Assembly (NCBI GenBank): GCA_964247055.1
Contig: OZ176053.1
Span: forward strand, 12,338,001-12,402,000
DNA: 64,000 nucleotides
From: Paragordius varius
Lineage: Eukaryota; Animalia; Nematomorpha
Reading direction: 5' to 3'
In this document: piece after piece, positions 3,501 through 49,168 of the stretch
Layout: every line of letters starts with the position of its first letter
Numbering within the stretch: the first letter of the stretch is position 1
Program-made: the position numbers and the translations under genes
The notes under the pieces: generated by a model
Told to the model about the DNA's origin: nothing
Databases searched by the model: none
Seen by the model: the letters and a program-made list of their open reading frames with translations, nothing else

Positions 3501-3941
3501 ACGATATTCCAAACATTCATTTAACATATATTTACTATGATATAAGAACACCAAATTTTAAAACATTAAATTTATAAAAAATAATTACTCAAACTTACGT
3601 TAATATTTTTCCGTCCGCAGTTAGGCCAGCAATAGAAACGCCGAGGTTATCATCGATTTCAAAAATTTTCTTTTGATTGCTTGAAAGTTCAGAAGTTGAC
3701 CTCTATAATATATAATAAAAGCAAAAAACTAACCATAAGAGCAACTATAACTGCATGAGTCTTATTCTTAACACCAACTGTACTGCTACCTTGTTTAACA
3801 GCCTCCATGGCATATTCAATTTGATGAATACGTCCCTTAAAAAATTAATAATTTTATTTTACTTGTGGACTTAGAACTGTAACATCGCTATCATAATGAT
3901 TTCGAAACTGCAAAAATAAATTAAATATAAAATTTAACCAT
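595..3941 (-). CDS. PSMA1: Proteasome subunit alpha type-1 (alpha6), 9 exons, about 243 aa
   Basis: Manually spliced exons: 3939-3941 (ATG only), 3863-3907, 3734-3835, 3599-3702, 3446-3534, 2721-2791, 2266-2395, 2003-2082, 595-702. All introns are GT-AG with consistent phases (31, 27, 31, 64, 654, 325, 183, 1300 nt). The translation contains [46 protein letters not shown] and [35 protein letters not shown]. The C-terminus is uncertain because there is a possible extra donor at 630. Confidence 0.93.
825..1951. mobile_element. Non-autonomous DNA transposon, Chapaev3-like, in PSMA1 intron 8
   Basis: 18-bp TIRs CACTGGACAACAAATTTT / revcomp CACTAGACAACAAATTTT (1 mismatch), flanked on both sides by TAA (822-824 and 1952-1954). 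CAC termini with a 3-bp TWA duplication are characteristic of Chapaev3. No ORF inside. Confidence 0.7.
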
Positions 3942-9259: not shown

Positions 9260-10342
9260 TTAAAATAATTAATATCAATCATTTTTGAATAAAAAATTTA
9301 ATATACTTCGGTTTATTATGCCATGGGTTCAATACCTTCCATATTTTTCAAAGAATTTAATTTTAAACAGGCCTAGGGTATCCAACTACCCCAATTTTAA
9401 TCGAAGGACTTAAATATTCGTGTTGTATACAAGTGTTAATCATTCTTTTTATTAATTAAATTTTCATGAAATTTTTGTGCTTGCTTTAGATAATATTAAT
9501 AATATTTTATCATCACCTATCTCTCTAACGAGATGTCTTACAGGCTATTAATTAGCTAAAAGGGGATTTAATTTATAAGTCTATTGAAATGATGAGATCT
9601 TTTATATTTTATCTCCAAATTTTTCGAAACACATTACAACAGACTTGTAAATATTACTCTTCAATCATCGAAAAGAGCAATAATAGCTCTCTTCTATATT
9701 TGGGGTATTAAAAATTTTTTAATATTAAAAATCTCAAAAATTAAATTAATTCCTTTAAAAAGATACTTTTAAGTAAATCCTAATTAAAACTTCCCTTATA
9801 GGTTAAAAAATGAGTCATTTAATGCTATTTTAGGCTTAAAAAGGGGCTGATATAATTTTAGCAGTATATATTTATTAGATTTCCCATTTGTACCCTATTT
9901 CTGATTCGTGGTAATTAGGGAAATTAAATTCTAAGTACATTTTTATTATTGTTTATTATTGATTTTCAGTACACACACACTTTCTCTATGGGTTCATATC
10001 TATCCTATTCTATCCTCCCATCCTATTTTTGTTTAAATTATTATTTATTAATCTCAAATGTACTTTGCCCTGATTACATATTTTTTAGCATGGTGTATAG
10101 TATATTAATAAGGAAAAGAGAGAGTTCGTTTCAATTTTATTAGTATATATTTAAAATTATATGTATAACTCTAAAACACAATAATATCGTTTTAATATGA
10201 TGAAATTAAAATGGAGTAAAAAATCTAGAATTCTAGGTTGTACTCTCTCTATATATATTTAGGGTATTACTTTGTTTTCTAAAACGAGCTCCAATCATAT
10301 TGATTATATTATATATTTATTGGGGGTACATTCATTTTCTAA

Positions 10343-13300
10343 TCTATATATTTATAAAAATGGAAAATGCTGGCTTTGTGATCTGGTACAGGAAAACCGG
10401 TAGACCCAATCAAATCCAAATATCGAAAAAATATAATCATTAATAAATGTCCCGACAATAGCTTCGCCCTTTTTTTGGAATAGGCCCCCAGTTCGGGCCC
10501 ACCCCGTATGAAAAACGGGTTTTTTTTGAAAACAGAAGTCCACAAAATCGTGTTTTTGAGACAATTTTCCGGAGAACGTGTTGGACCATTCAATTTCAAA
10601 TATGATTTTTGTTTACTTATTTTCGATTGCGCCGAACATAGCCGAGCCACTTTTTTGTTTTAGGCCCTCTTTTTACCCGCTCCCCCCGTAAAATGCCACC
10701 TTTTTCAAAAAACAAAGTCCACAAAAATAATTTTTTAAATCGATTTTTCGCCCTAGGTATGAGACCGTAAAAATTCAATAAAGATTCCGCGTATTCCCTG
10801 TTAAAAGGCAAAAATTTTAGTCTACCGTTTATTTGATGATGGCTGCTTGGTAAGGAGCTACCTGCTAAAAACTGATTTTTCATATAACTTTGTGATCTGT
10901 TTCCGGAAAACCGGTGAACCCAATCAAATCCAAACATCGAAAAAATTTAATCATTAATAAATGCCCCGACAATAGCTTCGCCCTTTTTTGGAATTAGGTC
11001 CCCAGTTTGGGCCCACCCCGTGTGAAAAATGGGTTAAGTCAATTTTTTGGAGAACGTGATGGACCATTCAATTTCAAATATGATTTTTGTTTACTTATTT
11101 TTGATCGCGCTGAACATGGTCGAGTCACTTTTTTGATTTAGGCCCTCTTTTTACCCGCTACCCCCGTAAAATGCCATTTTTTTCAAAAAAAAACAAAGTC
11201 CACAAAAATATTTTTTTGATTGTATTTTTTTGTCCACGGTATGAGACTCTAAAAATTCGAGAAGGTTTTTTCGTATTGCCTGTTAAAAGAAAAAAATTTT
11301 AGTCAAGCGTTTCTTTGATGATAACTGCTGAGTAAGGAGTATCTATCATATGTATAGCATGTTAAAAGATATATGGATATTAATACATTATTTATCCTCA
11401 TCTATATATTTATAAAAATGGAAAATGCTGGCTTTGTGATCTGGTACAGGAAAACCGGTAGACCCAATCAAATCCAAATATCGAAAAAATATAATCATTA
11501 ATAAATGTCCCAACAATAGCTTCGCCCTTTTTTTGGAATAGGCCCCCAGTTCGGGCCCACCCCGTATGAAAAACGGGTTTTTTTTGAAAACAGAAGTCCA
11601 CAAAATCGTGTTTTTGAGACAATTTTCCGGAGAACGTGTTGGACCATTCAATTTCAAATATGATTTTTGTTTACTTATTTTCGATTGCGCCGAACATAGC
11701 CGAGCCACTTTTTTGTTTTAGGCCCTCTTTTTACCCGCTCCCCCCGTAAAATGCCACCTTTTTCAAAAAACAAAGTCCACAAAAATAATTTTTTAAATCG
11801 ATTTTTCGCCCTAGGTATGAGACCGTAAAAATTCAATAAAGATTCCGCGTATTCCCTGTTAAAAGGCAAAAATTTTAGTCTACCGTTTATTTGATGATGG
11901 CTGCTTGGTAAGGAGCTACCTGCTAAAAACTGATTTTTCATATAACTTTGTGATCTGTTTCCGGAAAACCGGTGAACCCAATCAAATCCAAACATCGAAA
12001 AAATTTAATCATTAATAAATGCCCCGACAATAGCTTCGCCCTTTTTTGGAATTAGGTCCCCAGTTTGGGCCCACCCCGTGTGAAAAATGGGTTAAGTCAA
12101 TTTTTTGGAGAACGTGATGGACCATTCAATTTCAAATATGATTTTTGTTTACTTATTTTTGATCGCGCTGAACATGGTCGAGTCACTTTTTTGATTTAGG
12201 CCCTCTTTTTACCCGCTACCCCCGTAAAATGCCATTTTTTTCAAAAAAAAACAAAGTCCACAAAAATATTTTTTTGATTGTATTTTTTTGTCCACGGTAT
12301 GAGACTCTAAAAATTCGAGAAGGTTTTTTCGTATTGCCTGTTAAAAGAAAAAAATTTTAGTCAAGCGTTTCTTTGATGATAACTGCTGAGTAAGGAGTAT
12401 CTATCATATGTATAGCATGTTAAAAGATATATGGATATTAATACATTATTTATCCTCATCTATATATTTATAAAAATGGAAAATGCTGGCTTTGTGATCT
12501 GGTACAGGAAAACCGGTAGACCCAATCAAATCCAAATATCGAAAAAATATAATCATTAATAAATGTCCCAACAATAGCTTCGCCCTTTTTTTGGAATAGG
12601 CCCCCAGTTCGGGCCCACCCCGTATGAAAAACGGGTTTTTTTTGAAAACAGAAGTCCACAAAATCGTGTTTTTGAGACAATTTTCCGGAGAACGTGTTGG
12701 ACCATTCAATTTCAAATATGATTTTTGTTTACTTATTTTCGATTGCGCCGAACATAGCCGAGCCACTTTTTTGTTTTAGGCCCTCTTTTTACCCGCTCCC
12801 CCCGTAAAATGCCACCTTTTTCAAAAAACAAAGTCCACAAAAATAATTTTTTAAATCGATTTTTCGCCCTAGGTATGAGACCGTAAAAATTCAATAAAGA
12901 TTCCGCGTATTCCCTGTTAAAAGGCAAAAATTTTAGTCTACCGTTTATTTGATGATGGCTGCTTGGTAAGGAGCTACCTGCTAAAAACTGATTTTTCATA
13001 TAACTTTGTGATCTGTTTCCGGAAAACCGGTGAACCCAATCAAATCCAAACATCGAAAAAATTTAATCATTAATAAATGCCCCGACAATAGCTTCGCCCT
13101 TTTTTGGAATTAGGTCCCCAGTTTGGGCCCACCCCGTGTGAAAAATGGGTTAAGTCAATTTTTTGGAGAACGTGATGGACCATTCAATTTCAAATATGAT
13201 TTTTGTTTACTTATTTTTGATCGCGCTGAACATGGTCGAGTCACTTTTTTGATTTAGGCCCTCTTTTTACCCGCTACCCCCGTAAAATGCCATTTTTTTC

Positions 13301-14011
13301 AAAAAAAAACAAAGTCCACAAAAATATTTTTTTGATTGTATTTTTTTGTCCACGGTATGAGACTCTAAAAATTCGAGAAGGTTTTTTCGTATTGCCTGTT
13401 AAAAGAAAAAAATTTTAGTCAAGCGTTTCTTTGATGATAACTGCTGAGTAAGGAGTATCTATCATATGTATAGCATGTTAAAAGATATATGGATATTAAT
13501 ACATTATTTATCCTCATCTATATATTTATAAAAATGGAAAATGCTGGCTTTGTGATCTGGTACAGGAAAACCGGTAGACCCAATCAAATCCAAATATCGA
13601 AAAAATATAATCATTAATAAATGTCCCAACAATAGCTTCGCCCTTTTTTTGGAATAGGCCCCCAGTTCGGGCCCACCCCGTATGAAAAACGGGTTTTTTT
13701 TGAAAACAGAAGTCCACAAAATCGTGTTTTTGAGACAATTTTCCGGAGAACGTGTTGGACCATTCAATTTCAAATATGATTTTTGTTTACTTATTTTCGA
13801 TTGCGCCGAACATAGCCGAGCCACTTTTTTGTTTTAGGCCCTCTTTTTACCCGCTCCCCCCGTAAAATGCCATTTTTTTCAAAAAAAAACATGGCTTTGT
13901 GATCTGGTACAGGAAAACCGGTAGACCCAATCAAATCCAAACTTCGAACCCCCCCCCCCAGAAGTCCGAAGGACTTCCTCGGGCTGCGTAGCAGCACGAG
14001 ATTCACGCTAG
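10343..14011 (+). mobile_element. Non-autonomous Helitron-like element with internal tandem array (3 x 1058 bp + 495 bp)
   Basis: Starts A|TCTATATATTTATAAAAATGG and ends hairpin (13978-14000) + 7 nt + CTAG|T. The 5' TC terminus recurs at 10343, 11401, 12459 and 13517 (period 1058). No Rep/helicase ORF is present. Confidence 0.85.
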
Positions 14012-32919: not shown

Positions 32920-33187
32920 CAGTGGTTCCCAACAGGGGCCGTAGAAAAATCTAAGGGGGGCGCGAAAATTTTGAGAATATGTTTAAAAAATAAAAGATTT
33001 CAGGTGCAAATTACCAAGATTTGTCATACATATAAAAAATATTTTAAAAATTGCAAGTGCAAGGTTCTCATTGATTGGAATTTTTATATTATAATAAATT
33101 TTACATTTATCTTGGATTAATTAAAACGGGGGCGTGAGGGTTTTTTCAATTTTGTGGGGCGTGAACAAAAAAAGTTGGAAACCACTG
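32920..33187. mobile_element. hAT-type MITE
   Basis: TIRs CAGTGGTTCCCAAC / GTTGGAAACCACTG. Flanks CTTGAAAC / CTTAAAAC resemble an 8-bp TSD, with a one-base overlap ambiguity. Internal GGGGCGYGA motifs. Confidence 0.75.
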
Positions 33188-34386
33188 CTTAAAACATCAT
33201 AAAAACACATTTTCATAATACAATACACCGTTTTATGTGAAGTATCTTAAAGCCCGAATCAATTAAATTTTGCCATAAATTAAATTTGAAGGCAATTTAA
33301 TTCTTTTTTTCAAATAAACATCATTTGTGTCACAAATTAGCATATATATTTCAAAATTTCTAACGCCCTTCTTCGGAATTATTAAATTTATTTTAATTAT
33401 AATACCATTTTAGAGGGGTCTTAAAATTGGGTCTTTTAAATTATATAAAATCATGAAATTTTTAGTGACGTTTTTAGAAATGAAGCATTAAGCTTTCACT
33501 CAAAAAGTTTATGCCAAGTTTTGCGTTCCGATATGAAGACTTTATCACAAAATTGTATAAAATGATCCCACTGAAAATATAATCAGATAAAACTAATGTA
33601 ACGATTATCATGGTGCTTTTTGGGCCATATGAGGTCTGCAACCAAGTCACTATCACTTTTGGCTAATTTCTTCATATCAATGGAAAAGTTTGATCATATT
33701 TTGTTAATAAATTTTATCTGGTAAACAATAAATGCTTCATTCCAAATAATATCACTAAGATATATCATAATCTATATAAGAATAACATGATTTTTATAAA
33801 AAATTGAATTTTAGGTGGACCCTAAGAGTCTCAGACCCGTCCAAAAGGACAAGTTCTCTCAAATAAAAGGCCGAAATCAAGATTTTTGAAGAAACCCTAA
33901 GTTTTGATATCAAATAAAATTTAATCGAAAAAAATAGTATTTTGCTTTAAAAATTAATTTATGGCAAATTTTTGGTGAAGCGAGTTTTATGGTATTTTGA
34001 AGCATCGTGGCAATGGTATAAAATTTAAAATATTATTAAAAAACTTTTTTTATAATTTCACAGTGTACAAAAATACCATGATGAATATGTATGTATTTCG
34101 GATATATATGTGGTTTCACTGTGTAATTACACCCTTTAAAACACCTTTCAGAACCTTAAAAAATGTATGAACCAAAGTTCTAACTTTTTTTAAAATTTTA
34201 TTAGATCAAAATTCTCTCGATCTATTTAAATATTTATTCTAAATATTCGGCAAAATTCCTTGTTACATATCTAATAAATAAAGTACTCAATTAATGATGA
34301 AAGTTTTACAAATTTATCCTCTTATATCATGAATATTACTAATAAATTTTTTTCTGTCGATTTTCGACTGATCTCATATGTAATTT

Positions 34387-34824
34387 ATGAAAACAGCTGC
34401 CGAGCTCAGAGACGAATTTATTTGGTCAGTCAAAAACGGTGATATAGAGAGAGTTAAACATTTTATTAAATCAGAGGTTTGTTTTTAATTAAGTTTAGTT
34501 TGGTGTTAATGAAGATTTAAAAGGGCGTTTACCCATTCATTATGCTGCCGACTTTGGACAAGAAAATATTGTAAAATATTTAATCGAGAATGGATCAGAT
34601 ATAGATGTATGTAAATTTTACATTTTAGGCATACGATAAACATGGAATATCTCCATTGTTAGCGGCTACTTGGGAAGGCCACACAAATATTGTTAAAATT
34701 TTACTGGAAAACGTAAAATTTAAATAAATTTTAGGGTGCTAATAAAAACGTTTTGTCACCGCAAGGTTCCACATTGGTCGATTGTGCTGACAAAATGGAT
34801 ATTAAACAATTGTTAAAATCCTAA
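34387..34824 (+). CDS. MTPN: Myotrophin (V-1) ankyrin-repeat protein, 4 exons, 123 aa
   Basis: Exons 34387-34476, 34499-34606, 34629-34712, 34735-34824, separated by three 22-nt phase-0 GT-AG introns. Product: MKTAAELRDEFIWSVKNGDIERVKHFIKSE-FGVNEDLKGRLPIHYAADFGQENIVKYLIENGSDID-AYDKHGISPLLAATWEGHTNIVKILLEN-GANKNVLSPQGSTLVDCADKMDIKQLLKS. Confidence 0.93.
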
Positions 34825-35124
34825 AAAATTATGTGATAGTGATGCATTTATTTTTTTATACAATATTTATTAAATAAATTATTTTTATATTATATGATAT
34901 TTCTTTATATTTTTTAATACATATATAATAACCTGTTGGATTTTATCTTCCTATCTTTAAGGATGCGTAGGACTTTTAAGGCTCTTATCGAAAATCGATA
35001 ATTTAGGTAGTTTGTGTGTGATATATTCAAATTTATTTTTTCATCTCCCTATATAGTAATGCTACTCCCTTAGATTTCGAGTATTCAAATTACTTATGTA
35101 AATTTTATAATTTAATAATCATTA

Positions 35125-38100
35125 ATGGGTATTTTATTACGGGCCAGTGGCTTAAGTTTAATGAAAAATTTGTTGTATCTCATAATCATTTTATCATATA
35201 TTGGTTTACTATCCTTTTCCAAAACTACAAACGATGATTTTTCCTTGGAATTGCGAATTCCATCGTTTACGGCTGAACACGTAAGTTAAAAACGCTTTTA
35301 ATCTAAAACATTTAGGCTAATATGTATATGTGCCATGGAATCAAAATCAATTACTTCGAACCACTCTACATAAGTATTTTTATTGGCATAAATGATTAAA
35401 TTTAATAGCTAAATTTGTTGCGATCGATGAAACCCATAATGCTCATCATATCCTTCTTTATGGATGTGAAGAACCGGGTTATCCTCTCCAAGATTCTGAA
35501 AATATTTGGTAATTTTTATGTTAACTTTATTTAAAAAAACTTTTACCCATACATTTTATCTTTTAATAAACAGTATCATAATAGATTTCTCAAAAACAAT
35601 TGTTTTTGATTGTTATTGCTGGACGCAAGATTGTTATTATTTCATTTTTATTTTGTTGAAAGTGTAAAATGTAACATATAAACAGCCATTAAAACTTTAT
35701 AATATTTTGGTATGTTTTGCCAAAACTTGCTTATATTTAGTGATTTTTTTTTAATAATTTCAAATTTAATATTTAATGCCATCCTTTTTGGATGGGTTCT
35801 TATCAGTTTTTAATCATATAAACAAAGATTTTAGCTGACTTTATTTAATTTTGTCTAATCAAATGCTCCAATTTTATGAATCGATTTACTTAATTGAAAA
35901 TTATTGAGCATTTAAGACGCTGTATCTGAATTCCATTCCTTTGTTCCAAATGCAGTTTATTAAATCTTTTTTTATTTGATATGACTTTATAAGTTTAAGT
36001 TAAGCGGTCTTAATTGAAAGTTAGCCGATGTGAGCCCCTCATTATTTTATGATTAAAGTTTTAATGTCAATTTTTTAGGCCCTGCGGAGAAATGACTAAA
36101 AGCGATGAAATACATTACCCAATTTGCAAAAAATCACCAAAGATTATATATGCTTGGGCTAATATGGCACCTGAATTAAATTTACCACCAAGTAAGCAAT
36201 ACCTAATAATTACGATTTTAGTGTTTTTGCCCGTTTTTTAAGGTTTAATGAGACATCGATGTAAAAATTAAATGCAATATATTCTATATAATAATAGACA
36301 CTGGATTTAAAATTGGTCCTGGCACAAAAGTCAATTCCCTAGTTATGCAAGTCCATTATCTGAAGCCAAGTATTTGAGATAATATCTAACTTAACTACCA
36401 TTTAGGTAAAAGCGAAGATAATTCTGGCATTAGGATGCAATTGACAGATAAATTGTATGTATCTTCCTTTATTAAAATGTTATTTAATTATTGTTTTATT
36501 TTCGTTTTAGCTTGCCCCAAGAAGCCGGTATCTATTTGCTGTTAACTGGTGGCTTTATATTACCTAATTCTTATGGTATATTAAATTTATTTATTTAAAT
36601 ATAATTACCGGTTCTGAATTAATGCTAAAATATACCCATTATAAATTGATTTATAAAATAAATCTCCCATAAATTTGTTGTCTGTAGTACAATGAATAAA
36701 TAGTTAATCGACAATTTCTAATGATATGTGAAAACCTCCAATATTAGTTACAGTTTTTAGATCTCTTCGAAACTTTATCATTTGGCGATATTAATTTTGT
36801 ATGTATCCCAACGTTATTTGGGTATTGCAGTCTATAATGGTACAGTTAAGTTAAACAAAGTTACTAGAATACTACATGCATCGCGTACTTTAATATTTGA
36901 TCCAATTTTAAAATCTATTCCCTTTAATATAATATATTAAGGATAATAATTGTGTGAAAAATTAGGGCATTGTGTCATTTTTTATATTATAGTAAAAAAA
37001 ATAACGCTTATGAAACTCCATAATTTTTTTGAAAAAAAAAACAGATCAAAGAGGGATATTTCAATTTTTGTGCATCCTTGCAAATGGGACTTTTTAATCA
37101 TAGATATATTTTTAATTCTAAGCTTACACATCTATTTCCACAAAGAGAGCTATTATTGGCCATTTCAGTTAAATGAAAGGGTATTTACTTTTTTCATTTT
37201 TATGAGTTACGATTTTGAAAAAAAGTACAGTGAATAATTAAATATGTAACTAATAAAATCATAAATCTGATACATGGCATGTATATTTAATCCCCTACTA
37301 TTCATTAAAATTTATCGATAATAGCTCTCGTTACTGTATTCATAGAGATTACTAAATCATTTATTATAGATGCCTATTTATGCGCACAATTTATCCAAAA
37401 AAATATTCTTTTTTTACAAATAGTTGTTAAACTAGCACAAAAGACGCTTAACTGTAATATCATAAAAATATTAAAAGTATAAATACTTACCATAAGGTAC
37501 ATTTAACAAAATGTTTATTATGTAAAAATATTTTTTCTTAAAACCTTATTTTAGAATCGATGGAAGCAGCTTGTTCCATAGACCTTGATGTCAAAATTCA
37601 TCCTTTCGCTTTTCGGGCCCATACCCATAAATATGGGTATTTAGTTTCGGGCTATGTCGTTAAAAACGGACAATGGATAAAGTTGGGTGAAATATCGCCT
37701 CAATTGGAACAAGTCATTTTAACCAACTAAATTTTAGATGTTTTATCCAGTCAAAAATCAAGTTACCATTGAAAAAAATGATATTTTGGTATGATACATT
37801 TAATTTAAATTTCATCTTTTATGCTTAATGCCCAGCAATCGTTTAACAAAATAGTTATTTTTGACCTAAAAGGCGTGATGGTATAGTAGGTAGGGGGCCG
37901 GACTTAAACTCTGCGTGCCAGAGTTCGAACCACAAAACTACGCAATTTTTCCATCATCACTGTCAGCCCTGGGCAGGCGAGTGTTAAAGCCTTCACATGT
38001 CCGGATACAAATTTAAGTCCTTAACCTTTAATAAAAAAAGGAAAAAGGAGACTCTAACTGTATATTTTATTTTGAACTAAATTTATCATTTATTTTATAG

Positions 38101-39176
38101 GCTGCCCGATGTCTCATGAACAACACAAGCCCAAACATTGTGTTTATAGGGTATAATTTATATTTAACTTTTATTTTATTCAACGAGCATATGAAAGCAA
38201 GGGTAGTGTGTTTATAATAACGAGTATACATGGTCATATGATCTTTAGATTTACAGAATTAAAATATTTATTTTTTTGTGATAACTAAATCATCAATTGA
38301 TTTGGTTTACAGTCAAACCTAACCTTTTTGTCGTAAAAGAACAATGTTTCGTAGGATGTTTTAAAGGTTTTTAATATTAGAAGGCAACCTAATTTACAGT
38401 ATTATATAATTCATTAAATATGTATTCGATCCTTTAAAAATGAGAAATAACCGTAGTATGCATCATTAAATTATTATATACCGCCTTTTCCACCAATTTA
38501 AGAAATTTAATATTTTTAGGCCCACTGATGATGATGAAATGTGTAACTTTTACCTCATGTACTATTTCCAAGTCGACCGCTATAAACCCAATCAGGAATC
38601 TTTATTGGGTCAACAACAATGTTTCACACCGGGGCCTCCGTATTGGAGTTGGAATAGCTCAAAATCTTTTACAGATTCGCACAATTATTACAGTAAAAAT
38701 TAAAATTATGATAAAGACAAAGCGTAAAAACTAAGACAAATATTTTTTATCAAAGGACAACCATATTTTCTAACCTTAATAAAAAAAATTATTCATCGTT
38801 TTTGGTTGCAAAATATGGATATATATTTAAATTGTAATTATATAGTTTATGTAGGAAAAAATAGGGTTAAAAAAATATTTGTCCATTGATTTTACGTTTT
38901 GTCCGTATAATATTCATGTTTATTTATTTTAAAAAAATATTAACGAAAATACCCGTTACAAAAAGAGAATTAATATTTATCATATTGCATATGATTTCTA
39001 AATATATAAATGATCCAAAAAATTTTTATAAACCAGCAATTTTAAATTTATTTTGATGCACAAATTAATTTTTTGTAATATGATGATTGTATAATTACAA
39101 TATAGGTTCGTATCAAACAAATAACTACAACAATGATAATTTACTAATAAATGAAATTGAAGATGAAGAAGACTAA
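35125..39176 (+). CDS. PHM: Peptidylglycine alpha-hydroxylating monooxygenase (monofunctional PHM), 11-12 exons
   Basis: Exons 35125-35280, 35316-35373, 35409-35508, 36079-36191, 36298-36369, 36406-36454, 36511-36575, 37555-37712, 37738-37788, 38101-38150, then 38520-38703 (stop) or 38520-38692 plus 39106-39176. Hydrophobic N-terminal signal-like segment. Copper-ligand motifs AHHILLYGC, QVHY, FRAHTH and EMCNFY are present. Confidence 0.9.
37872..38045 (+). mobile_element. tRNA-derived SINE-like insertion in PHM intron 9
   Basis: A-box-like TGGTATAGTAGG, B-box-like GAGTTCGAACC and a degenerate cloverleaf, followed by an unrelated GC-richer body and an A-rich tail. Confidence 0.55.
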
Positions 39177-39471: not shown

Positions 39472-42400
39472 TTAGAGTATAGGGTCCTGGGTCCAACCCA
39501 CTAATTTTCGCTCAAACAATAACTCATTGATTGATTTGTATTGTAAATAATCTCCCACCTAAAATAAAGACAAAAAAAGATTAAATTAGGTATTTAAGTT
39601 TGCGATTCCATGATAAAAAGCATTTTAAAGAGATACGGACTAAATGTGAAAAACAAATAAAAATTTTGTTTTCAAAAAGAAAACCACCAAAAATTCAAAA
39701 TTTTAGTTTTTTATATAATTTATTTTGCCAAATATGGAATAAGGATGGATATTAATTATTTTACATTTTGTGAACATAAAAGTTATATTAAATATCAAGG
39801 TTTGGAAAAGTAAGGCTGTTTTTACAAATATTATTCTTCTAGTTTTTGAGCTTTGTCTGCATAAAGTTAATTTTTACTCCATATATAATTATTTAGGGTG
39901 AAAATAACTTAAATATAATTACATCATTTGCCGTTACATTCTGTTCAGAGGGTTCATTTTCTTTTAATATATTTTCAGGATTATTATTGTTGGTGTTGTT
40001 TCTATATAAAGTTATAAATGGTATATTAGTTTCATCATTAGTTATTGTTCCCATTGTCGGAAACATAGAGGGGGAGGGGGTGGAGGTATATGAATCAATA
40101 TGAGCAATAAATTCTGGACTTTCTTCATTTTCTGTTGGATGTTCTTGACCTGTTTTAATTGTATCCTTATTCTGTTGATTATGTAATGATGGTGACAAAG
40201 GCGCCGCCAAATACTTTGGAGGGAATTGAGATTTAACCAAACCCCTTAAAACTTTACAGGATTCGAGAGAGAAGACAGACTCCCCTTCACACGGTATCAG
40301 GTTAGACATGAAACATTCATTAGCGTATGCTGAAATATTCAGGAAATTTTGAACCAAAGGTTGGAAACTATCAAGAGTACATTGGGTAAACACGCCAAAA
40401 TCAATCAGTTTAATATAGGCCGTAAATATGAGAGGAGTTGTCCCATTTTGTGACAATATGTCTGCCGCCGTTTCATTGAAATTTTCGGGTGTTGTTTCAA
40501 ACGGGATATGCTGATAAATTTGGAGAATTTCGGCACGGTACCAAGAACCCATAATGTTTGCTGAACAAAACATCCCAACTATATAAAATAAAAATGAAAC
40601 ACATAATTAAATAAACCACAAACTAATAGAATTATTATGGGGTTTGTTAAACGAAATCGAAACAGCCATTGAGTAATAAAAATGTTGCTTACTTTGCAAA
40701 TATTTCCATTCCCTATCTTCAGCACCACTGAAAGTGCACAGATAAACGTTATGAAATTTATAAAAATCTAATCTAAAGCAACCCTTAAGCTTATTTAATC
40801 ACAGCAAACTAGCAATGTAATAAGCTTCAATAAACATAATCTAATTTTTGTCTAAAATATACACGTTAGTATACTTGCAATAAAAAAAAAGACAATAAAT
40901 TCCTTAAGGAAACAAAATAATCGCAATATATAAGGTCCACATAATCATAAGAAATGTTCTATGTCAGTGAAGGTTTAAACTCGACTATATTATTTATATA
41001 CATTAATACACAATTCTTCTAAATATGCGGATTAAAAGTGGTATATCCTAATATTAAACCAGATAAATTTAGGCAAAAATTAAAATAATTAATATAATGC
41101 GCGACCTAAAAATGTTACTAGTGTTTATTTATTTAAAAATATTCAACACAATTTAATTAATTTATATGTATGGCACAAAACTTGTGGACTATATGAAGTA
41201 GGTTAAATAACATTCATGATGACATATCTAAACCAGTCTATGGCCGTAATAATTAATTTTATTATATGATATATGATAATACAATTTTAATTACCTTAAA
41301 AAGCGTCTTTAGTGTATGTAAAAAGTTTACATTTTTATGCAAAGAATAAAGTTAATAATTAGCTAGAAAATTAATAGAAATAAATATTTTATTCATTTTA
41401 GAGAATCTAATCTAATATTAATAATAAAAGATGTTATATATTTTTTGCCTGGTAATAATTTACTTGCAAAAATTTGTGCAAATTTTTAGTAACTTTTTTG
41501 GACTTTTCCCAGGACTTAAAATCTATGGATAGAACTTAATAGTCAAGTCTATAAAAAACATACAGCTTAGTAATTAATATTATAAAAATTTGATATCAAT
41601 ATCTCAAAATCTATTAATTTGATAGTTTAGAACAAGGGTGCCCAATACGCGGCCCGCAAAAAATTTGAAATTTGCAAAATTTTACTCTCAAAAGATTTTT
41701 CTAATAAGTCAACCCAATTTGCAAAAATTAAATAAATTGTATTGTGTTGGTGTTCATTTGCGGCTGGCGAAGATATTCGTTTTGGACAACCTTAAAAATC
41801 CAATTTTTTTGACAGCTAATGAAGTTTTTTATCATTTTACATTTTGGCAATTATAATTACTCACGTAATTTATGAAAGACTCCCTGGAATCGATAACTAA
41901 ATTAAAAAGTAATCAAGCATGTGTTAAAATTTTTTACCAGATGGCGAAAAGGGTACCAATTCGATGGAATCGTAAAAGGCATTCAAAGAATCGTGCAAGA
42001 TTCGTAATTCCGTGAGGGCAGCGAGTTGATGAACAAAAATATGACCAGTAGATTTTATCCAGCTCACGTGGATTAACGAATCAGACGGAAAGAAAATTGA
42101 TTTTTTGCAAGATATGGTTAAATTCAAATCCATAGGCATCATAGGACTGACCAAAACATTCGATAAATCGATTGTAGGATAGTCAGGGATGGGAAATAAT
42201 TCACGTATACTGTTTATTAAGACTTCTAATCCTGCATAATCGCCTATAAATAGTTATGCATTAACTCAATTAATGTACCTTCAAGGAAAACAATGTTACA
42301 ATCTTTTTTAAAATTGTGCGGAGCGACAAAAACACTCCCATGTCCAACTAGCCTATTTAATCGTTTAATGTTGCGACCACCCTTTCCAATCAGCTTTCCA

Positions 42401-42624
42401 ACAAACCTACTTTCAATTTCAAACGCGTAGGTAAAGGTTGTAGAAAAGTTGAGGGCGGCATCCTCATCATGTATTAACTAAACATAAAAAATAATTCAAA
42501 CCTCATTCGACCGTGAAGATAAAGTGCCATCAGATATCAATTCCGAACTATCATTGTATGATTCAGTCAATGACAAAGGCATCAATTGAGATGCCAAAAT
42601 TGTATCGCCCATATAAAGTTCCAT
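39472..42624 (-). CDS. KH + Tudor domain protein, AKAP1/spoonbill-like, 5 exons, about 456 aa
   Basis: Exons 42502-42624, 42279-42477, 41938-42243, 39923-40578, 39472-39558; introns 24, 35, 1359 and 364 nt. KH motif FEIESRFVGKLIGKGGRNIK, GHIFVHQ, Tudor core VGMFCSANIMGSWYRAEIL...KLIDFG and C-terminal SINELLFERKLVGW match the AKAP1 architecture. Confidence 0.8.
41633..41794. mobile_element. Degenerate hAT-type MITE in AKAP1-like intron 3
   Basis: CAAGGGTGCCCAATACGCGGCCCGC start and GCGGCTGGCG...TTGGACAACCTT end. No clear TSD. Confidence 0.45.
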
Positions 42625-42962
42625 TTGGGAAAAAACAAATAAATTTAAATATATATGGAACTACGTTTTTACTATTATATTTAAATAATAATTCGATTTA
42701 TAATTTATATAGGGGACAATGATTCTAACCTGTATTTTAAACAATTTTTACTAGATATATAACTTCGGATACAACTGAATTTCCAACTAGCATGTTAATC
42801 ACAGGAAATGTGGTCCTACACGTGTTAATAAACGATGAACATAAAAATGTTATCACATGCGAATTTATTTTACCTCAATGGAATGGATTAGCGCAAAAGC
42901 TGAATAAACAATTACGAAAATGTTTATTTTAACAGTATATTATTATTGATATCCAATAATTT

Positions 42963-43646
42963 ATGGATAATTCCAAACAACCTTTTAATATTAATGTGTT
43001 GGAAGATAAATTAGTTCAATGCAATCTCAACAAAAACATACATTTGCTGGAATATTTGGAAGCTTATAGTGAGATTAAAAAGTTTTTCCAATTACTTGGC
43101 AGGTTGTTTGTCTTCATACAACAAGACATCCAAAATAAAATAATTTTACTTTTTAACTTCGCTACGGATGATCCTATTCATTACGAAACAATTTTATCCA
43201 TGGTCAATTATGAAATTCTCAGTGCTAATCTTTCCCACAAAGAGTTAGCAAAAAACGATGTAGCCATTGGAAGCAAGATTTTTCTGCGACTCCATAGAGC
43301 CTTTAATTTTTTCATTGATTTCTTGGATGGGATTGTCAAATATGAAAATCCGGAAAGTGATTTTAAATTATCACCTATTGCTCAAATTTCTTATAATGCA
43401 ACACTGTCCTCATATCATCCTTGGGTGGTTAGAAAAGCGGTTAATTTAGCGGTGTGTGCTCTACCGACCAAAAATCAACTTATGGGTGAAATTTTTCTCG
43501 CCAGAAATGCAAATGATGAGGCAAATGACCCGAAAGAATTGTTAGATTATGCTCGAAATAAATTAAAATCGATTATAAAGGAAGCCCGAGAAATTTACTC
43601 CAAAAATCAGGCTATTTATCAAAGTCATAATTTATTAAATATTTAA
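42963..43646 (+). CDS. GLTP: Glycolipid transfer protein family member, intronless, 227 aa
   Basis: Single ORF with YLEAYSEIKKFFQLLGRLFVFIQQDIQNKI, GSKIFLRLHRAFNF and YNATLSSYHPWVVRKAVNLAVCALP, typical of the GLTP fold. Confidence 0.88.
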   Translation: MDNSKQPFNINVLEDKLVQCNLNKNIHLLEYLEAYSEIKKFFQLLGRLFVFIQQDIQNKIILLFNFATDDPIHYETILSMVNYEILSANLSHKELAKNDVAIGSKIFLRLHRAFNFFIDFLDGIVKYENPESDFKLSPIAQISYNATLSSYHPWVVRKAVNLAVCALPTKNQLMGEIFLARNANDEANDPKELLDYARNKLKSIIKEAREIYSKNQAIYQSHNLLNI

Positions 43647-43876
43647 TAATTTGTCTATCTAATAATGCGTCTCTCATATCTAGTCAAATGTAAAAATAAT
43701 ATATGGTATTTATTTTTGTCTATCTATATATAATTTATATTATAAAATTATTTTCTGCATACATTTTGTACAATACATTGCCATGCCCAAACACCTCTTT
43801 TAAAATCACACACAGACAGATTTAGCCAATGATATTATTTTATTAATAAATTAATAAAATAAAAAATATAATGATA

Positions 43877-46800
43877 TCACATGATATTGAGTATATCTTT
43901 GGGAGCGAGGACGTGTTTAAAAACGTTTGAAAGCATTTCATAACGAGATGTTAGAAATTGGTAATCACCAACCATTATGAGTTTATGTTTTGCGCGGGTG
44001 AATGCCACATTTAGTCGTTTAATGTCGCTAAGTATATCGTCGATCCTTCTAACTTTTTTCTTGGGGCTACCGGAAGCATCTAATGCTGCGGCTTGTTTCG
44101 TGAATGAAAAGATTATAACCTCTTTATCCTTGCCTTGGAATTTGTCAATCGTGCTACATTCTATTTGTTCGTGAGATGATGGCAAACATTTGGTGATTGC
44201 TTCAATTTGATCATTATATGGAGCTAAAATAGCTAACTTATTCAGGGGGAATATGTGTGATCCAATACATTGTAATGCATCGACTATAGTATGTATCACA
44301 TAAACTTCAGTTAGGTTTACCGTGTTTTGAAGCACCGATGATTTTGGTGTCACATTTTCCTTTGCCCTTAGTATCTCGGCAATTCCTGAAAGTTTATCCT
44401 GGCTCACCCCATTTTTTGTATCCAAAAAAATGATTGAACGTTCGATTATGGAATCAAAAGCAAGCGATAACCAGCGGGGTGTTTTTAGATTTAACAAAGC
44501 TTCCATTACAGCTGGATCAATAGTTGAATACGCAGAGAGGCTTGTCTCATCACATTTGAGTTGGAAATCGTAGATGAGATGGTTACTAAGTTGCAGGATG
44601 CGTTTATTCATACGATACTGTGTGGTTAATTTACAAATGTTAATGAGGCTAATGGAGTAGTTATCTGTTTTCATATCCCTAGCTGCCACCACCAAATCTA
44701 TCAAATGTTGGAACAAACTTTGATTTCTTAGGTGAGAGGAAGAATGCATAGAATTACTCCTAAATATGGGAGTTAGTTGTGCCGAATCCCCAAACATAAC
44801 TGAAACATGTGCCACATTAAATAACGGTCCTAAGGCTAATGGTTCACTAATTTGAGAAGCTTCATCCATTATGCACACATCATACCTTAATTTTTGGGCC
44901 ACTAAATCGCTAGTAAAAGACAAAAAAAAGATTTAATTTAAACATTAAAAAAAGTTTAGCTATACATTTTTAGAATTTAGCCAAAACAATTAAAAAATTA
45001 CTAAATAATAAAAATATTATATCAAAATGATTAAATTTGAAAAAAGGGAAAGGAAAAACACGCTAAATGGATATTGTAAGAATGAAGTGCAAGTCAAAAT
45101 AAATGATTGGTTTTAAAAATCACTTTCTGAAAAGTAGATAAAATTTTATAATTTACAAAAAAACATCAGTCAAATTTACCACTACAGCACGCCCCTCTAA
45201 TATGCTTTTCTCCATTTCTCTTTCCCCTTGTTCTATTTAATAGCATTTCCCCTTTTTAATATAAAATTATTTTAAATTTTGTCAAGTATTTTTTGTGTTT
45301 ATTGTACTTGCAAAAATTGGCACACGTCGTGCCAAATATAGAGCATGATTGTAGGACATTTATTAAGGCTGTTAATAGATCACTGATGACAACCGCTTCA
45401 GCTTTTTTTGCCGATTGCGCTTTTTTGATTCGGTTCTCTAGCACATATTCGTGTAGTTGGGAATCAATTTTTTGACTATTCGTAGAACCAAATCGAACAA
45501 GAGAATTTTTTATATCATCATCAAGCGCAATTAATCGTTTAAATATGTTATCTATGGCAGAATTTGTGTGAGAAACTATCAGGCAAGACTTCCCAAGTTT
45601 CAGCGCAAACGCATGGATGAGATGTATAATGGTTTCAGTTTTACCAGCTCCGGGGTATCCTTCAACCATCAAAATACCTTGGGACATTTCACAAGCCTGG
45701 CGTATAACGTCCCTTTGTTCACTATTAAGTTCTTTCTCATACAAAGTGTCAAAGTTTAGGGGCGTTGCTCTTTGCTTCTCCAGTTCTGAAGAATTTGTAG
45801 ACTGGCGTGATAATTCGTGGTGTATAACCATATTCCGTAACATAGTGGACTCGAGGGATGGTTTAAATAGCTGCAACACATTCCCAAATCCAGCATAAAG
45901 CAAAGAAGTTGTAATTGAGTATTGGATTTGTGTCGTAGCGGTATTCAAGCGTGGATTAACCTCTTCCCACAGGATTTCAAACCAGTCTTTGAAATATTTT
46001 ACGTCTTTGGGCGTTAAATGTTTCGTATTTTGTAACCACATTTCAAATAATTCATGTGGGATGATATTTTTGTCAGGCGGCGTAGAAAAAAGTTCCTCTA
46101 TATCTTCAATAGGATTTTCATCAAACAAATCGGTATAGGTATTATCTATTACAGTATCCATGTTGTTACTACTTTGTTGTGGCTTATTAATGTGACTCAA
46201 ATGCGTTTGGCGTTCAATTTGGCCCACAAGTGCACACGTAAAAAGTTGAGGACACCATCGACAAACCCTGGCATTATTGATCGGTTCAGGTATGGAAGTT
46301 ATATAATCGCTTCTCCAATCCAGGTGTGATGCAAGCAAATTCCTTCGCTCTAGGAGAGCTCTAATATGATGACTAGAAGCTTTGTCAAAACTATTTTTAA
46401 CGAACCTACAAACGATATCAGGAGGGGTATTGTGTAATTCTTGACTATAATTTTCGGTGCATGATTTTCGATTGGCGTTGAATTCTAAAGGGTAAAAAAC
46501 TGTAATCAGGGATCTGAAGCAATGAAAATATATTTCTTTAAATCCGTTTCCATGTATTTTATTAAAAAAAATAGTTTGTTTGGACAAAACGAAATCCGCT
46601 ACGCAAAGATTTTTTAACAAAAAAGTTTTGGTTTTGATTCCGTGCTTTTTTTATTAAATATGATTCATTTTCTGTTGTTTTTGTTTAAATGGTTTCAATA
46701 AAACAACCCAATTTTAAATAAATTATTAAAAGCTGAAACCTAAATAAAACCTATGAAATATACTTTTACAATGCAAAAAAATATATTAATAAATAAGGTG

Positions 46801-49168
46801 TGTATATATATTAAACAAAAATAATCACAATGTAAATTGATTGAATTTCGTTCTAAAACTGTTTTGAATTGTGTTTCAGGTGTCGCAAATACGGTTTTTA
46901 CGATTTATTTAATATAATTAACTTTAGCTAAAATTTATCATAGATTAATTATTAAACAAAAAAACCTTCCCCATCAAGGTACAAAAGGTATGATGGATAA
47001 TTCATTCGATTGCTTGTGGTAGTTTCATTTTTCTTAACATATTCTCGTAACAGGTGTTGATATAACATGACTTGGCCTTCATGTTCAACGCCATTTGTCA
47101 TTTTCCCCGTTTTGAGTTCCAAAATGATGAGATCTTTATTATCGTCTGAAACAACCAAATCAATTATGCCTTTAAGTCCAAGCGTTTCAGACGATATACT
47201 AATTTCTCGTCCGTAAACTTTTGAGTATTTGAGAAGGGGCATTTTTGTCGAATCTGCTGATGGTGTTTTTTGGAAAGGCAAATTTTTAGCATACGCAGAA
47301 TAATAATGATTTTGTCGCCATTTGATGATTGCAGGGATACGAGCCCTCAATTTGCGTTTAGTTTCAATGAGTGAGCTATCACTATTAAAAGCTTCAAAAA
47401 GGTAATTGACATTTGTAAATTCTTCATCTATAAGACGATTCAATAAAAGCGTTTCTTGTTCGGGTTGCAGACAGGTGTCAATGGTTGAGATCAAATAATT
47501 TTGGAAGACATTATGAAACATTTTCCCGTAAATTAAAGGGTTAACACCATTGAAATTGTCATATAACGTTTCTAAAACATAAAATAAAATAATTGCGAGT
47601 GTTAAATAAATAAAATACTGTTGATGCTACAAAAATTAAACAACATCCAGAAAGTTATTATGATTATAACTTTTATCCTATTCAAGCAAGGTACAAATAG
47701 TTTAAAATTAGAAATCAATCTAAAAATGTATAAACGCAATAGATACTTTCACAAAATAAATTCAAATGGATACAGCGTCAAAAATAATCTAATATAAATA
47801 AAGCTTCCTTAATTTAAAATTATATTTGTTAATTTCAGAAAATAATAGAATTCAAATAAAAATTTACAGTGAAATTAAATTTATACGGACAAAACGTTAA
47901 AATATAAAGACAATTTTTTTCAAGACAACCATATCTTTTAAATCTTGAATTTTTTAATATGAATCATTGTTAAAGATTGTTATAAATCAATTACATTTTC
48001 TTCAATGATAATTAAATAATTTATGAGTTGCTTTATTCTAGCTATAGTACCATTTTTTGTGTATTATTAACGTCATTATATATATTTCAAAGGTTTATTC
48101 TAGGATTCGAAACGAAAAATGGCGTTTAAAGTTTTAATAAAAAACCTTGTATAACTTACTTTATTTTGATTTTAATAGGATTACGACCCTTTAAAAAGTG
48201 TTACGCTTCCGGTATACGTTTTTTGAATAATAGTTTTAAAAATAAAGCGTAATAAATAAAAATTTATGATGTTTTTTTGACAATACTCTAAAAAAGATAT
48301 AATTATATTTTTGATCGTAGACCCGCGTTTTAGTTTAAACAGTAAAGGAAGGTCTCAGGGCTTAGTTTACGATTCCTGCTTAATAATTTTATGGTATACC
48401 ATATTTGTAGTATTATATCATAAGATTATATATTTTAATTATTATTAAAATTAAATTTTACCAGCATTGTTGCTTCCCACTTTGTATCTTTTGACATCCG
48501 AAATAGTTCCATTAGTTGTATTCAAAAAATTTAAGACAGATTTTCTTAAACATAATAGGGAACTGGTTATATTTGTGCATGATATTTTCTTTAAAGGATT
48601 TTCAATGATTGTTACAATTTTTTTGGCAATATGTAATTCAAAAACTAATTTATCTGAGAGTATAACACATTGTGATTTTGGAATTTTGTCAACTGTATTT
48701 TTAGCTTCGTTAATTATATATAGTTGATAATCTTCATTTATATTTTCTTTGATTATTATGGATACTATAATGGTATTATGTTTGATATCATTATCGCTTA
48801 ATATGAAATTATTCGGGATGAAAAGAGCAATATTTTCGCCCGAGTAATGCTTCTCAATATGAAGCTTTTGGATTTTTAAATTCGAGCAATTAAAAATCGG
48901 AACATAAAATATATCCTGGAGTTGAAATAGGTTCTCATTTATATTTTGAATTATGTGTCTGGCCAAAATAAGAGATTCGATTTTAAACCCACTTAATTTT
49001 ACATCTAAAATAATTAAGATAAACAACTTTGGTGAAAGTATCTTGTCAACTTATTTTGCTTAATAATTTTATTGAATTTCGGAATGATAGGATTTTCAAT
49101 TTGGGTATTTTTGAATGGGTAGCCAGAACACATGGTAACTTAAATATTGAGCGTGTATCAGATGGCAT
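43877..49168 (-). CDS. DNA2: DNA replication ATP-dependent helicase/nuclease DNA2, 5 exons, about 1158 aa
   Basis: Exons 49051-49168, 48462-49004, 46966-47571, 45308-46484, 43877-44909. Nuclease motifs GIIDL, ELKTG and QVMLY; Fe-S cysteines (LCLRKSVL, CRWCPQLFTC); Walker A EGYPGAGKT; helicase motifs DEASQ, TIDKFQGKDK and RLNVAFTRAK. The start codon is tentative. Confidence 0.9.

What the first reader, a model, noticed from the sequence alone, without database searches (positions are those of the whole stretch)
34387..34824. Myotrophin gene interrupted by three introns of exactly 22 nt
Seen: GTTTGTTTTTAATTAAGTTTAG (34477-34498), GTATGTAAATTTTACATTTTAG (34607-34628) and GTAAAATTTAAATAAATTTTAG (34713-34734). 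Each is 22 nt and phase 0, and retaining any one leads to an early stop. Removing all three gives a complete, collinear 123-aa myotrophin. Established: most animals have minimal introns of about 45-90 nt. Introns near 20-30 nt are known from ciliates, nucleomorphs, microsporidia and, among animals, mainly dicyemids. Inference: this animal has a spliceosome able to excise introns at or near the lower size limit, with 22 nt as an apparent floor.
Basis: partly seen in the sequence, partly recalled or inferred. Interest (0 to 1): 0.88.

Follow-up and report, generated by a model that had tools for sequence, protein, structure and literature searches.

The report
Myotrophin gene with three 22-base introns
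A small, intact myotrophin-like gene in what is probably a horsehair-worm genome is split by three 22-base GT-AG segments that are almost certainly real introns, one more case of a tiny-intron class so far published for only two other animal groups, but I could get no RNA to show the cutting.

Summary
At 34387-34824 (+), four open pieces in three different frames are joined exactly by removing three 22-nt GT..AG segments. The result is an ATG-to-TAA reading frame of 123 codons.

The first piece matches solved myotrophin best. The last aligns weakly with its C-terminus at the right spacing. The middle two are ankyrin repeats.

This is the only such three-segment chain in the window, with none in reversed controls. 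Ten tiny introns of 22-31 nt sit in six genes here. One in PSMA1 is confirmed by gap-free alignment to solved proteasome chains. Ordinary introns of about 70-1,000 nt lie beside them.

The nearest relative found is the horsehair worm Gordionus.

Splicing itself is not shown: the three RNA runs gave no contigs.

Introns under 30 nt in animals are already published for dicyemids and myxobolid cnidarians (PMC13644364). I found no report for Nematomorpha.

This scan has already noted the same class many times on other DNA of this genome. "22 nt as a floor" is not established; other windows report 21.

The parts
34387..34476 (+). Exon 1 (ATG, 30 codons): N-terminal capping helix of a myotrophin-like protein
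   Evidence: Translation. The best solved match is myotrophin: query residues 9-27 align to 1myo 4-22, E 0.006-0.007.
34477..34498 (+). Intron 1: 22 nt, GT..AG, phase 0, 18% G+C, A at 7 and 8 nt from the 3' end
   Evidence: Keeping it gives a stop after 3 codons.
34499..34606 (+). Exon 2 (36 codons): first full ankyrin repeat
   Evidence: Pfam Ank_2, Ank and Ank_3 above their cut-offs, E 5e-7 to 1e-6. Ankyrin and DARPin matches.
34607..34628 (+). Intron 2: 22 nt, GT..AG, phase 0, 18% G+C, A at 7 and 9 nt from the 3' end
   Evidence: Present in DNA form in a contig of run X3.
34629..34712 (+). Exon 3 (28 codons): second ankyrin repeat
   Evidence: Pfam Ank E 4e-4, 20.9 bits against a cut-off of 21.1. 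Ankyrin matches.
34713..34734 (+). Intron 3: 22 nt, GT..AG, phase 0, 9% G+C, A at 7-9 nt from the 3' end. It splits the ankyrin turn motif between LLEN and GANKN.
   Evidence: Present in DNA form in a contig of run X3.
34735..34824 (+). Exon 4 (29 codons plus TAA): C-terminal cap
   Evidence: Aligns to myotrophin 1myo residues 91-117 of 118. The match is weak (E 1.1), but the spacing from the exon 1 match differs by a single residue.
34873..34878 (+). AATAAA, 49 nt after the stop: likely polyadenylation signal
   Evidence: Pattern position. Its function is inferred.

Best explanation
This is a working single-copy gene for a myotrophin/V-1-type protein: a 123-aa ankyrin-repeat protein, known in other animals as a regulator of actin capping protein. 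It sits in an AT-rich, transposon-rich animal genome whose nearest sequenced relative is the horsehair worm Gordionus.

Its three 22-nt segments are ordinary U2-type GT-AG spliceosomal introns shrunk to near the physical minimum. The likely working (inferred): the 5' GT(A/T) site, a branch adenosine 7 nt before the 3' end and a 3-4 nt T-run before AG are read across the intron itself (intron definition). That leaves only about 15 nt between the 5' site and the branch point.

The same genome also splices introns of hundreds to thousands of bases. The tiny introns are therefore a separate size class, mostly near gene starts, and not a by-product of a compacted genome.
For: Shown:
- Exact GT..AG boundaries at codon borders. 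Removal gives one ATG-to-TAA frame of 123 codons, and each exon sits in a frame shifted by one.
- Exon 1 has myotrophin as its best solved match. Exon 4 aligns, weakly, to the myotrophin C-terminus. The spacing between the two anchors is 68 against 69 residues, which fits only if all 66 nt are removed.
- Exons 2 and 3 are ankyrin repeats.
- Exons are 31-37% G+C against 9-18% for the segments.
- It is the only such chain in 128 kb of two strands, with none in reversed controls.
- Sister cases in the window: PSMA1 has introns of 31, 27 and 31 nt. The exons either side of the third align without a gap to solved PSMA1 residues 17-49 and 51-84, and the one residue in between is the exon's last.
- BUB3 has a 22-nt intron after an exon that matches solved Bub3.
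- Tiny introns of 23-25 nt lie in a PHM-like gene (named from recalled similarity), a KH-Tudor gene and DNA2.
- An A lies 7 nt from the 3' end in all five introns of 22-25 nt in MTPN, BUB3 and PHM.
- Organism: the DNA2 helicase exon is closest to Gordionus DNA2 among 1.84 billion representatives, and is its sister in a likelihood tree, SH-aLRT 99.
- The Gordionus DNA2 model itself starts with introns of 39 and 41 nt followed by introns of 0.2-22 kb.

Published precedent that animal spliceosomes can do this: PMC13644364.
Against: There is no RNA evidence. Three RNA-labelled runs under the same species label laid no contig on 33001-39000 even at 85% likeness, so transcription and the exact junctions are unproven.

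I could not run the whole spliced protein against the databases, because it has no reference and I did not type it. The myotrophin assignment therefore rests on exon-wise matches, one of them weak (E 1.1).

I did not find the Gordionus myotrophin gene, so conservation of the intron positions is untested for this gene.

The link to Nematomorpha rests on one gene at 42% identity on long branches.
Confidence: 0.85

Rival explanations
1. The locus is a dead or silent copy, a pseudogene. The three segments are short insertions that are never removed, so no full protein is made.
For: No transcript could be found in the RNA-labelled runs.
Against: Three independent insertions would each have to be 22 nt, start GT, end AG, fall exactly between codons and be much more AT-rich than the exons. 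Meanwhile the four exons keep open frames, a start, a stop, ankyrin consensus and a poly(A) signal. The same kind of segment interrupts PSMA1, an essential gene with no second copy seen in the window.
Confidence: 0.05
2. The gene is spliced, but with other junctions than those proposed, for example nearby alternative GT or AG sites or exon skipping. The true introns would then not all be 22 nt.
For: The sequence is AT-rich and has other AG dinucleotides inside intron 1. The DNA2 5' intron in this window can be read as 20 or 23 nt.
Against: Only the proposed boundaries keep the frame and restore the ankyrin motifs across the joints. The chain scan over lengths of 20-24 nt returned a single solution.
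Confidence: 0.05
3. The segments are not removed from RNA but from DNA (germline-limited sequences cut out in somatic cells, as in ciliates), or they are assembly artefacts.
For: None directly. Programmed DNA elimination exists in some nematodes (own knowledge).
Against: The ends are GT..AG, not the TA..TA typical of excised DNA elements. A second data set under another label carries segments 2 and 3 in the DNA. No DNA contig with the joined form was seen (table 5).
Confidence: 0.02
4. The genome is not a horsehair worm but a dicyemid or myxobolid. In that case the finding is simply the published phenomenon.
For: My first guess from the AT-richness and the 22-nt length. The published medians are 22 bp in two myxobolids (PMC13644364).
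Against: DNA2 groups with Gordionus, next to a clade that includes Drosophila. The piece is over 10 Mb long. Introns of hundreds of bases, one holding a high-copy repeat, are common here, unlike the compact genomes described in PMC13644364.
Confidence: 0.03

Closest known systems
Ultra-short introns of myxobolid cnidarians (Thelohanellus kitauei and Myxobolus rasmusseni, median 22 bp; Henneguya salminicola, 27 bp), PMC13644364
   Same: An animal lineage with GT-AG introns of about 22 nt, a reduced 5' site (little beyond GTA/GTT), a few A residues shortly before the 3' AG as the likely branch site, and a parasitic lifestyle.
   Different: In myxobolids the tiny size is the genome-wide median in compact genomes. 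Here the tiny introns share genes with introns of about 70 to 1,000 nt in this window. The lineage is a bilaterian close to Gordionus, not a cnidarian.
Dicyemid introns (Dicyema japonicum; PMC6736024, PMC13644364)
   Same: A bilaterian parasite with introns under 30 nt at conserved positions and weak splice-site motifs.
   Different: Dicyema has a small, reduced genome in which short introns are the rule. The DNA2 tree here points to Nematomorpha.
Short-mode introns of parasitic flatworms (Gyrodactylus salaris modes at about 32 and 58 bp; tapeworm bimodality; PMC4040987)
   Same: The length distribution has two or more modes, with the short class concentrated at the first intron positions of a gene and long introns in the same genes.
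   Different: The flatworm short mode is about 32 bp or more. Here the class reaches 22 nt, and unchecked notes on other windows report 21.
Gordionus montsenyensis, the nearest sequenced relative (10.1101/2023.06.26.546503)
   Same: About 27% G+C. A gene start with small introns followed by very long ones: DNA2 has 39 and 41 nt, then 0.2-22 kb.
   Different: The Gordionus small introns seen are about 40 nt, not 22-31. The paper does not discuss introns.
Myotrophin / V-1 (solved structures 1myo, 2myo, 3aaa)
   Same: About 120 aa. N-terminal cap helix, two full ankyrin repeats and a C-terminal cap in the same order and spacing.
   Different: Five extra N-terminal residues and one residue fewer between the anchors. 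Binding to actin capping protein is untested.

Membership tests
U2-type GT-AG spliceosomal intron | GT at the 5' end and AG at the 3' end | tested here: met
   All three segments.
U2-type GT-AG spliceosomal intron | Removal restores one open frame that is collinear with homologous proteins | tested here: met
   The frame is 123 codons. The N- and C-terminal anchors to solved myotrophin are spaced 68 against 69 residues. The whole-protein alignment was not run.
U2-type GT-AG spliceosomal intron | Branch-point adenosine followed by a pyrimidine run before the AG | tested here: inconclusive
   All three have an A 7 nt from the 3' end followed by TTT or TTTT. In sequence this AT-rich that is weak evidence. 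The branch was not mapped.
U2-type GT-AG spliceosomal intron | Excision from the transcript | tested here: inconclusive
   I laid three RNA-labelled runs (X8-X10) on the stretch and got no contigs. That is neither support nor refutation.
Myotrophin / V-1 family | Small protein (about 118 aa) made of a capping helix, two ankyrin repeats and a C-terminal cap | tested here: met
   123 aa. Pfam ankyrin matches on exons 2 and 3. Exon 1 has myotrophin as its best solved match. Exon 4 aligns to residues 91-117.
Myotrophin / V-1 family | Significant full-length similarity to known myotrophins or orthology | not tested
   The spliced protein has no reference and I did not type it. The exon-wise E-values are 0.006-0.007 and 1.1 only.
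Animal lineages with introns under 30 nt (as defined in PMC13644364) | Real introns shorter than 30 nt in conserved genes | tested here: met
   Eight segments of 22-27 nt in six genes of the window. A 31-nt sister intron is confirmed by gap-free PSMA1 alignment. All of this is without RNA.
Animal lineages with introns under 30 nt (as defined in PMC13644364) | Genome-wide median intron length under 30 nt | not testable with these tools
   Only one window is readable. Within it, introns of about 70-1,000 nt are as common as tiny ones, so the median is probably not under 30.
Nematomorpha (origin of the genome) | Conserved genes group with known horsehair worms | tested here: met
   The DNA2 exon has Gordionus as its best hit: 160.6 bits against 128.7 for the next. 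It is sister to Gordionus with SH-aLRT 99. This is one gene, on long branches.

The most novel reading that the evidence does not exclude
Horsehair worms (Nematomorpha) are a third, independent animal lineage with spliceosomal introns under 30 nt. Unlike myxobolids and dicyemids, they keep this class (about 21-31 nt, mostly near gene starts) side by side with kilobase introns in a large, transposon-rich genome. Extreme intron shortening would then not be a side effect of genome compaction, and one spliceosome would routinely handle a 5'-site-to-branch distance of about 15 nt.
Probability: 0.75. Interest if true: 0.75.

Novelty: new member of a known kind. Interest (0 to 1): 0.6.

Why it matters
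Textbook and annotation practice treat about 30 nt (often 40-50) as the lower limit for animal introns, and most aligners and gene finders discard shorter gaps. A recent survey of 51 animal genomes found introns under 30 nt only in myxobolids and one dicyemid, and tied them to small parasite genomes (PMC13644364).

If the horsehair-worm reading holds, this gene and its neighbours show the same extreme in a large genome full of long introns. That separates intron miniaturisation from genome shrinkage. It also offers a system in which tiny and long introns of the same transcript can be compared.

In practice, genes such as this myotrophin are likely to be missed or broken by standard annotation of these genomes. 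That could inflate reported gene loss in Nematomorpha.

Tried and rejected
- **RNA test.** My single run search was made with kind 'any' on 10 kb. It returned RNA-labelled runs only by species label. Laying three of them at 85% likeness gave no contigs. This is a dead end, not evidence of silence.
- **First guess of organism.** I first guessed a dicyemid or myxobolid. I dropped this after the DNA2 search and tree and on seeing long introns with repeats.
- **Naive open-frame census.** A census of all GT..AG pairs was no better than the reversed control. A motif-filtered list was still noisy. Only homology-anchored introns were kept.
- **Protein searches.** Searches with GLTP and with the 46-aa open frame around exon 2 found nothing.
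- **Atlas search.** A search with exon 1 gave only generic ankyrin clusters.
- **Gordionus myotrophin by synteny.** The 58-kb Gordionus DNA2 locus holds no relative of the window's myotrophin, GLTP or KH-Tudor genes, and no DNA similarity.
- **Rfam and tRNA scans.** Both found nothing in the window.
- **Literature.** I found no paper on the myotrophin gene's exon structure.
- **Left out.** Any search, fold or exact look-up with the whole spliced 123-aa protein. It has no reference and I did not type it.

Full report
**1. The observation**

- An ATG at 34387 opens 30 codons.
- A 22-nt GT..AG segment follows (34477-34498), then 36 codons.
- A second 22-nt segment follows (34607-34628), then 28 codons.
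- A third follows (34713-34734), then 29 codons and TAA at 34822-34824.

All three segments lie between codons. Because 22 is one more than a multiple of three, each exon lies in a frame shifted by one from the exon before it. Joined, the four pieces give 372 nt, or 123 codons. Keeping any one segment runs into a stop within a few codons.

**2. Is it more than chance?**

I scanned both strands of the window for ATG-to-stop chains with these properties:
- three GT..AG segments of 20-24 nt that break the frame;
- exons of at least 25 codons;
- at least 110 codons in all.

The scan returns this gene and nothing else. The two reversed control sequences return nothing. Ten block-shuffled windows gave three chains in all, counted before the frame-breaking filter.

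The exons have 31-37% G+C, the three segments 9-18% and the flanks 21-24%. AATAAA lies 49 nt after the stop.

A contig of a second public data set (X3, another organism label) lies on 34593-34900. It carries segments 2 and 3, and its one differing letter listed (34839) falls after the stop. The segments are therefore present in DNA and are not an assembly artefact.

**3. What the gene is**

Pfam finds ankyrin repeats in exons 2 and 3. Among all solved structures, the best match of exon 1 is myotrophin: residues 9-27 align to 1myo 4-22, E 0.006-0.007. Exon 4 aligns to 1myo 91-117 of 118. That match is weak (E 1.1) but lies in the right place.

The two anchors are 68 residues apart in the spliced product and 69 in myotrophin. 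This fits only if all 66 nt are removed.

The third joint rebuilds the ankyrin turn motif (LLEN followed by GANKN), seen directly in the translation.

I could not run the whole spliced protein through the database tools, because it has no reference and I did not type it. Full-length orthology is therefore inferred, not tested.

**4. The same class in neighbouring genes**

| Gene | Strand | Tiny intron(s) | Support |
|---|---|---|---|
| PSMA1 | - | 31 nt directly after the ATG (3908-3938), 27 nt (3836-3862), 31 nt (3703-3733) | |
| BUB3 | + | 22 nt (4215-4236) | first exon matches solved Bub3 |
| PHM-like monooxygenase (named from recalled similarity, not a tool match) | + | 25 nt (37713-37737) | |
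| KH-Tudor gene | - | 24 nt (42478-42501) | |
| DNA2 | - | 23 or 20 nt near its start (49005-49027) | |

For PSMA1, the exons on either side of the third intron align to solved human PSMA1 at residues 17-49 and 51-84. The one residue between them is the last of the upstream exon, so there is no gap. This is the strongest single proof that such segments must be removed exactly.

BUB3 continues with an intron of about 69 nt and then introns of roughly 0.4-1 kb. In the PHM-like gene the tiny intron is followed by introns of about 310 and 370 nt.

An A lies 7 nt from the 3' end in all five introns of 22-25 nt in MTPN, BUB3 and PHM. In the longer ones the A lies further back. PMC13644364 describes the same trend for myxobolids and Dicyema.

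The last exon base before the intron is G, T and C in the three myotrophin introns. The 5' signal is therefore little more than GT plus A or T.

**5. RNA**

My single run search listed RNA-labelled runs only by species label. Three of them, laid on 33001-39000 at 85% likeness, gave no contig at all. Transcription and the junctions are therefore unproven. I regard this as the main gap.

**6. Whose genome**

The window has about 28% G+C and lies on a piece longer than 10 Mb.

Notes of earlier agents suggested a horsehair worm, and I tested this. The DNA2 helicase exon (43877-44920, -) was searched against 1.84 billion representative proteins. Its best hit is DNA2 of Gordionus sp. m RMFG-2023, at 160.6 bits and 42% identity against 128.7 bits for the next. 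In a likelihood tree of 46 sequences the two are sisters with SH-aLRT 99, next to a clade that holds Drosophila.

The branches are long, so the animal is a distant relative of Gordionus. This rests on one gene.

Gordionus has 26.9% G+C (10.1101/2023.06.26.546503). Its DNA2 gene model starts with introns of 39 and 41 nt, followed by introns of 0.2-22 kb. That looks like a longer version of the same architecture.

**7. How it most likely works (inferred)**

These are U2-type introns recognised across the intron. The elements are a minimal 5' site, a branch A at position 16 of 22, and three or four T before AG. That leaves about 15 nt from the 5' site to the branch point. This is far below the usual animal minimum, but within what other eukaryotes and two animal groups manage (PMC13644364).

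The same transcripts carry long introns, so both modes must be handled by the same cell.

**8. Comparison with what is known**

Introns under 30 nt in animals are published for Dicyema and for myxobolid cnidarians. A survey of 51 metazoan genomes found no other case, and predicted that more would turn up (PMC13644364).

Parasitic flatworms show a short mode of about 32 bp concentrated at the first intron positions (PMC4040987). This is the closest parallel for the position bias.

None of the horsehair-worm genome papers I could search mentions introns.

The finding is therefore a new member of a known kind, not a new kind. This scan has already recorded the class many times elsewhere in this genome. 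This gene adds a clean, fully tiny-intron example but no new principle.

"22 nt as the floor" is not established. It is the minimum among the well-anchored introns of this window. Other windows report 21 nt (unchecked), and one intron here can be read as 20 or 23 nt.

**9. Verdict**

| Question | Answer |
|---|---|
| Observation | Confirmed |
| Interpretation | Partly supported: real introns very likely (about 0.85), floor claim not supported, no RNA |
| Novelty | New member of a known kind |
| Interest | 0.6 |

Noticed in passing
window 3599-3941 (-): The 5' end of the PSMA1 (proteasome alpha-1) gene carries three tiny introns of 31, 27 and 31 nt. The first comes directly after the ATG. The exons flanking the third align gap-free to solved PSMA1 residues 17-49 and 51-84. 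Later introns of the gene are several hundred nt.
   Followed up: yes
window 4020-6400 (+): BUB3 gene, head-to-head with PSMA1 and about 80 nt from its start codon. It has a 22-nt first intron (4215-4236), then an intron of about 69 nt (phase 1), then introns of roughly 1 kb and 0.4 kb.
   Followed up: partly
window 37801-38200: A tRNA-like, SINE-looking repeat inside a 310-nt intron of the PHM-like gene. Contig depth in run X3 is about 2,200 against about 4 for single-copy DNA, so it is a very high-copy element.
   Followed up: no
window 37542-38700 (+): PHM-like copper monooxygenase gene, named from recalled similarity and not from a tool match. It has a 25-nt intron (37713-37737) in the middle of the gene, not at its start, so the tiny class is not strictly confined to 5' ends.
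   Followed up: partly
window 39893-42660 (-): KH-plus-Tudor gene (TDRKH-like) with a 24-nt phase-0 intron at 42478-42501 near its start.
   Followed up: partly
window 43871-49139 (-): DNA2 nuclease-helicase gene. It has a candidate 23- or 20-nt intron at 49005-49027 and an intron of about 330 nt between 44923 and 45256. The gene spans about 5.3 kb, against 38.7 kb in Gordionus.
   Followed up: partly
L001 3001-3260: The Gordionus DNA2 gene model (CAK9292388.1) begins with introns of 39 and 41 nt. The 39-nt one is in frame and stop-free, so it could be a model artefact.
   Followed up: partly
window 42963-43646 (+): Single-exon glycolipid-transfer-protein gene (Pfam GLTP, E 7e-34). It had no relative sharing short words in the 5.8-billion-protein index, which shows how divergent this proteome is and that it is absent from that collection.
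   Followed up: partly
window 10339-13824 (-): Four repeats, about 1,058 nt apart, of a pair of overlapping ORFs of roughly 103-106 aa. This is the tandem array another first-stage note calls Helitron-like. G+C there rises to 34-36%.
   Followed up: no
window 33001-39000: RNA-labelled runs filed under the same species label as the best DNA run (X8-X10, 19-30 million letters of contigs) hold nothing from this 6-kb stretch, even at 85% likeness. The label may cover a different species, or these genes are weakly expressed in the sampled stage.
   Followed up: no
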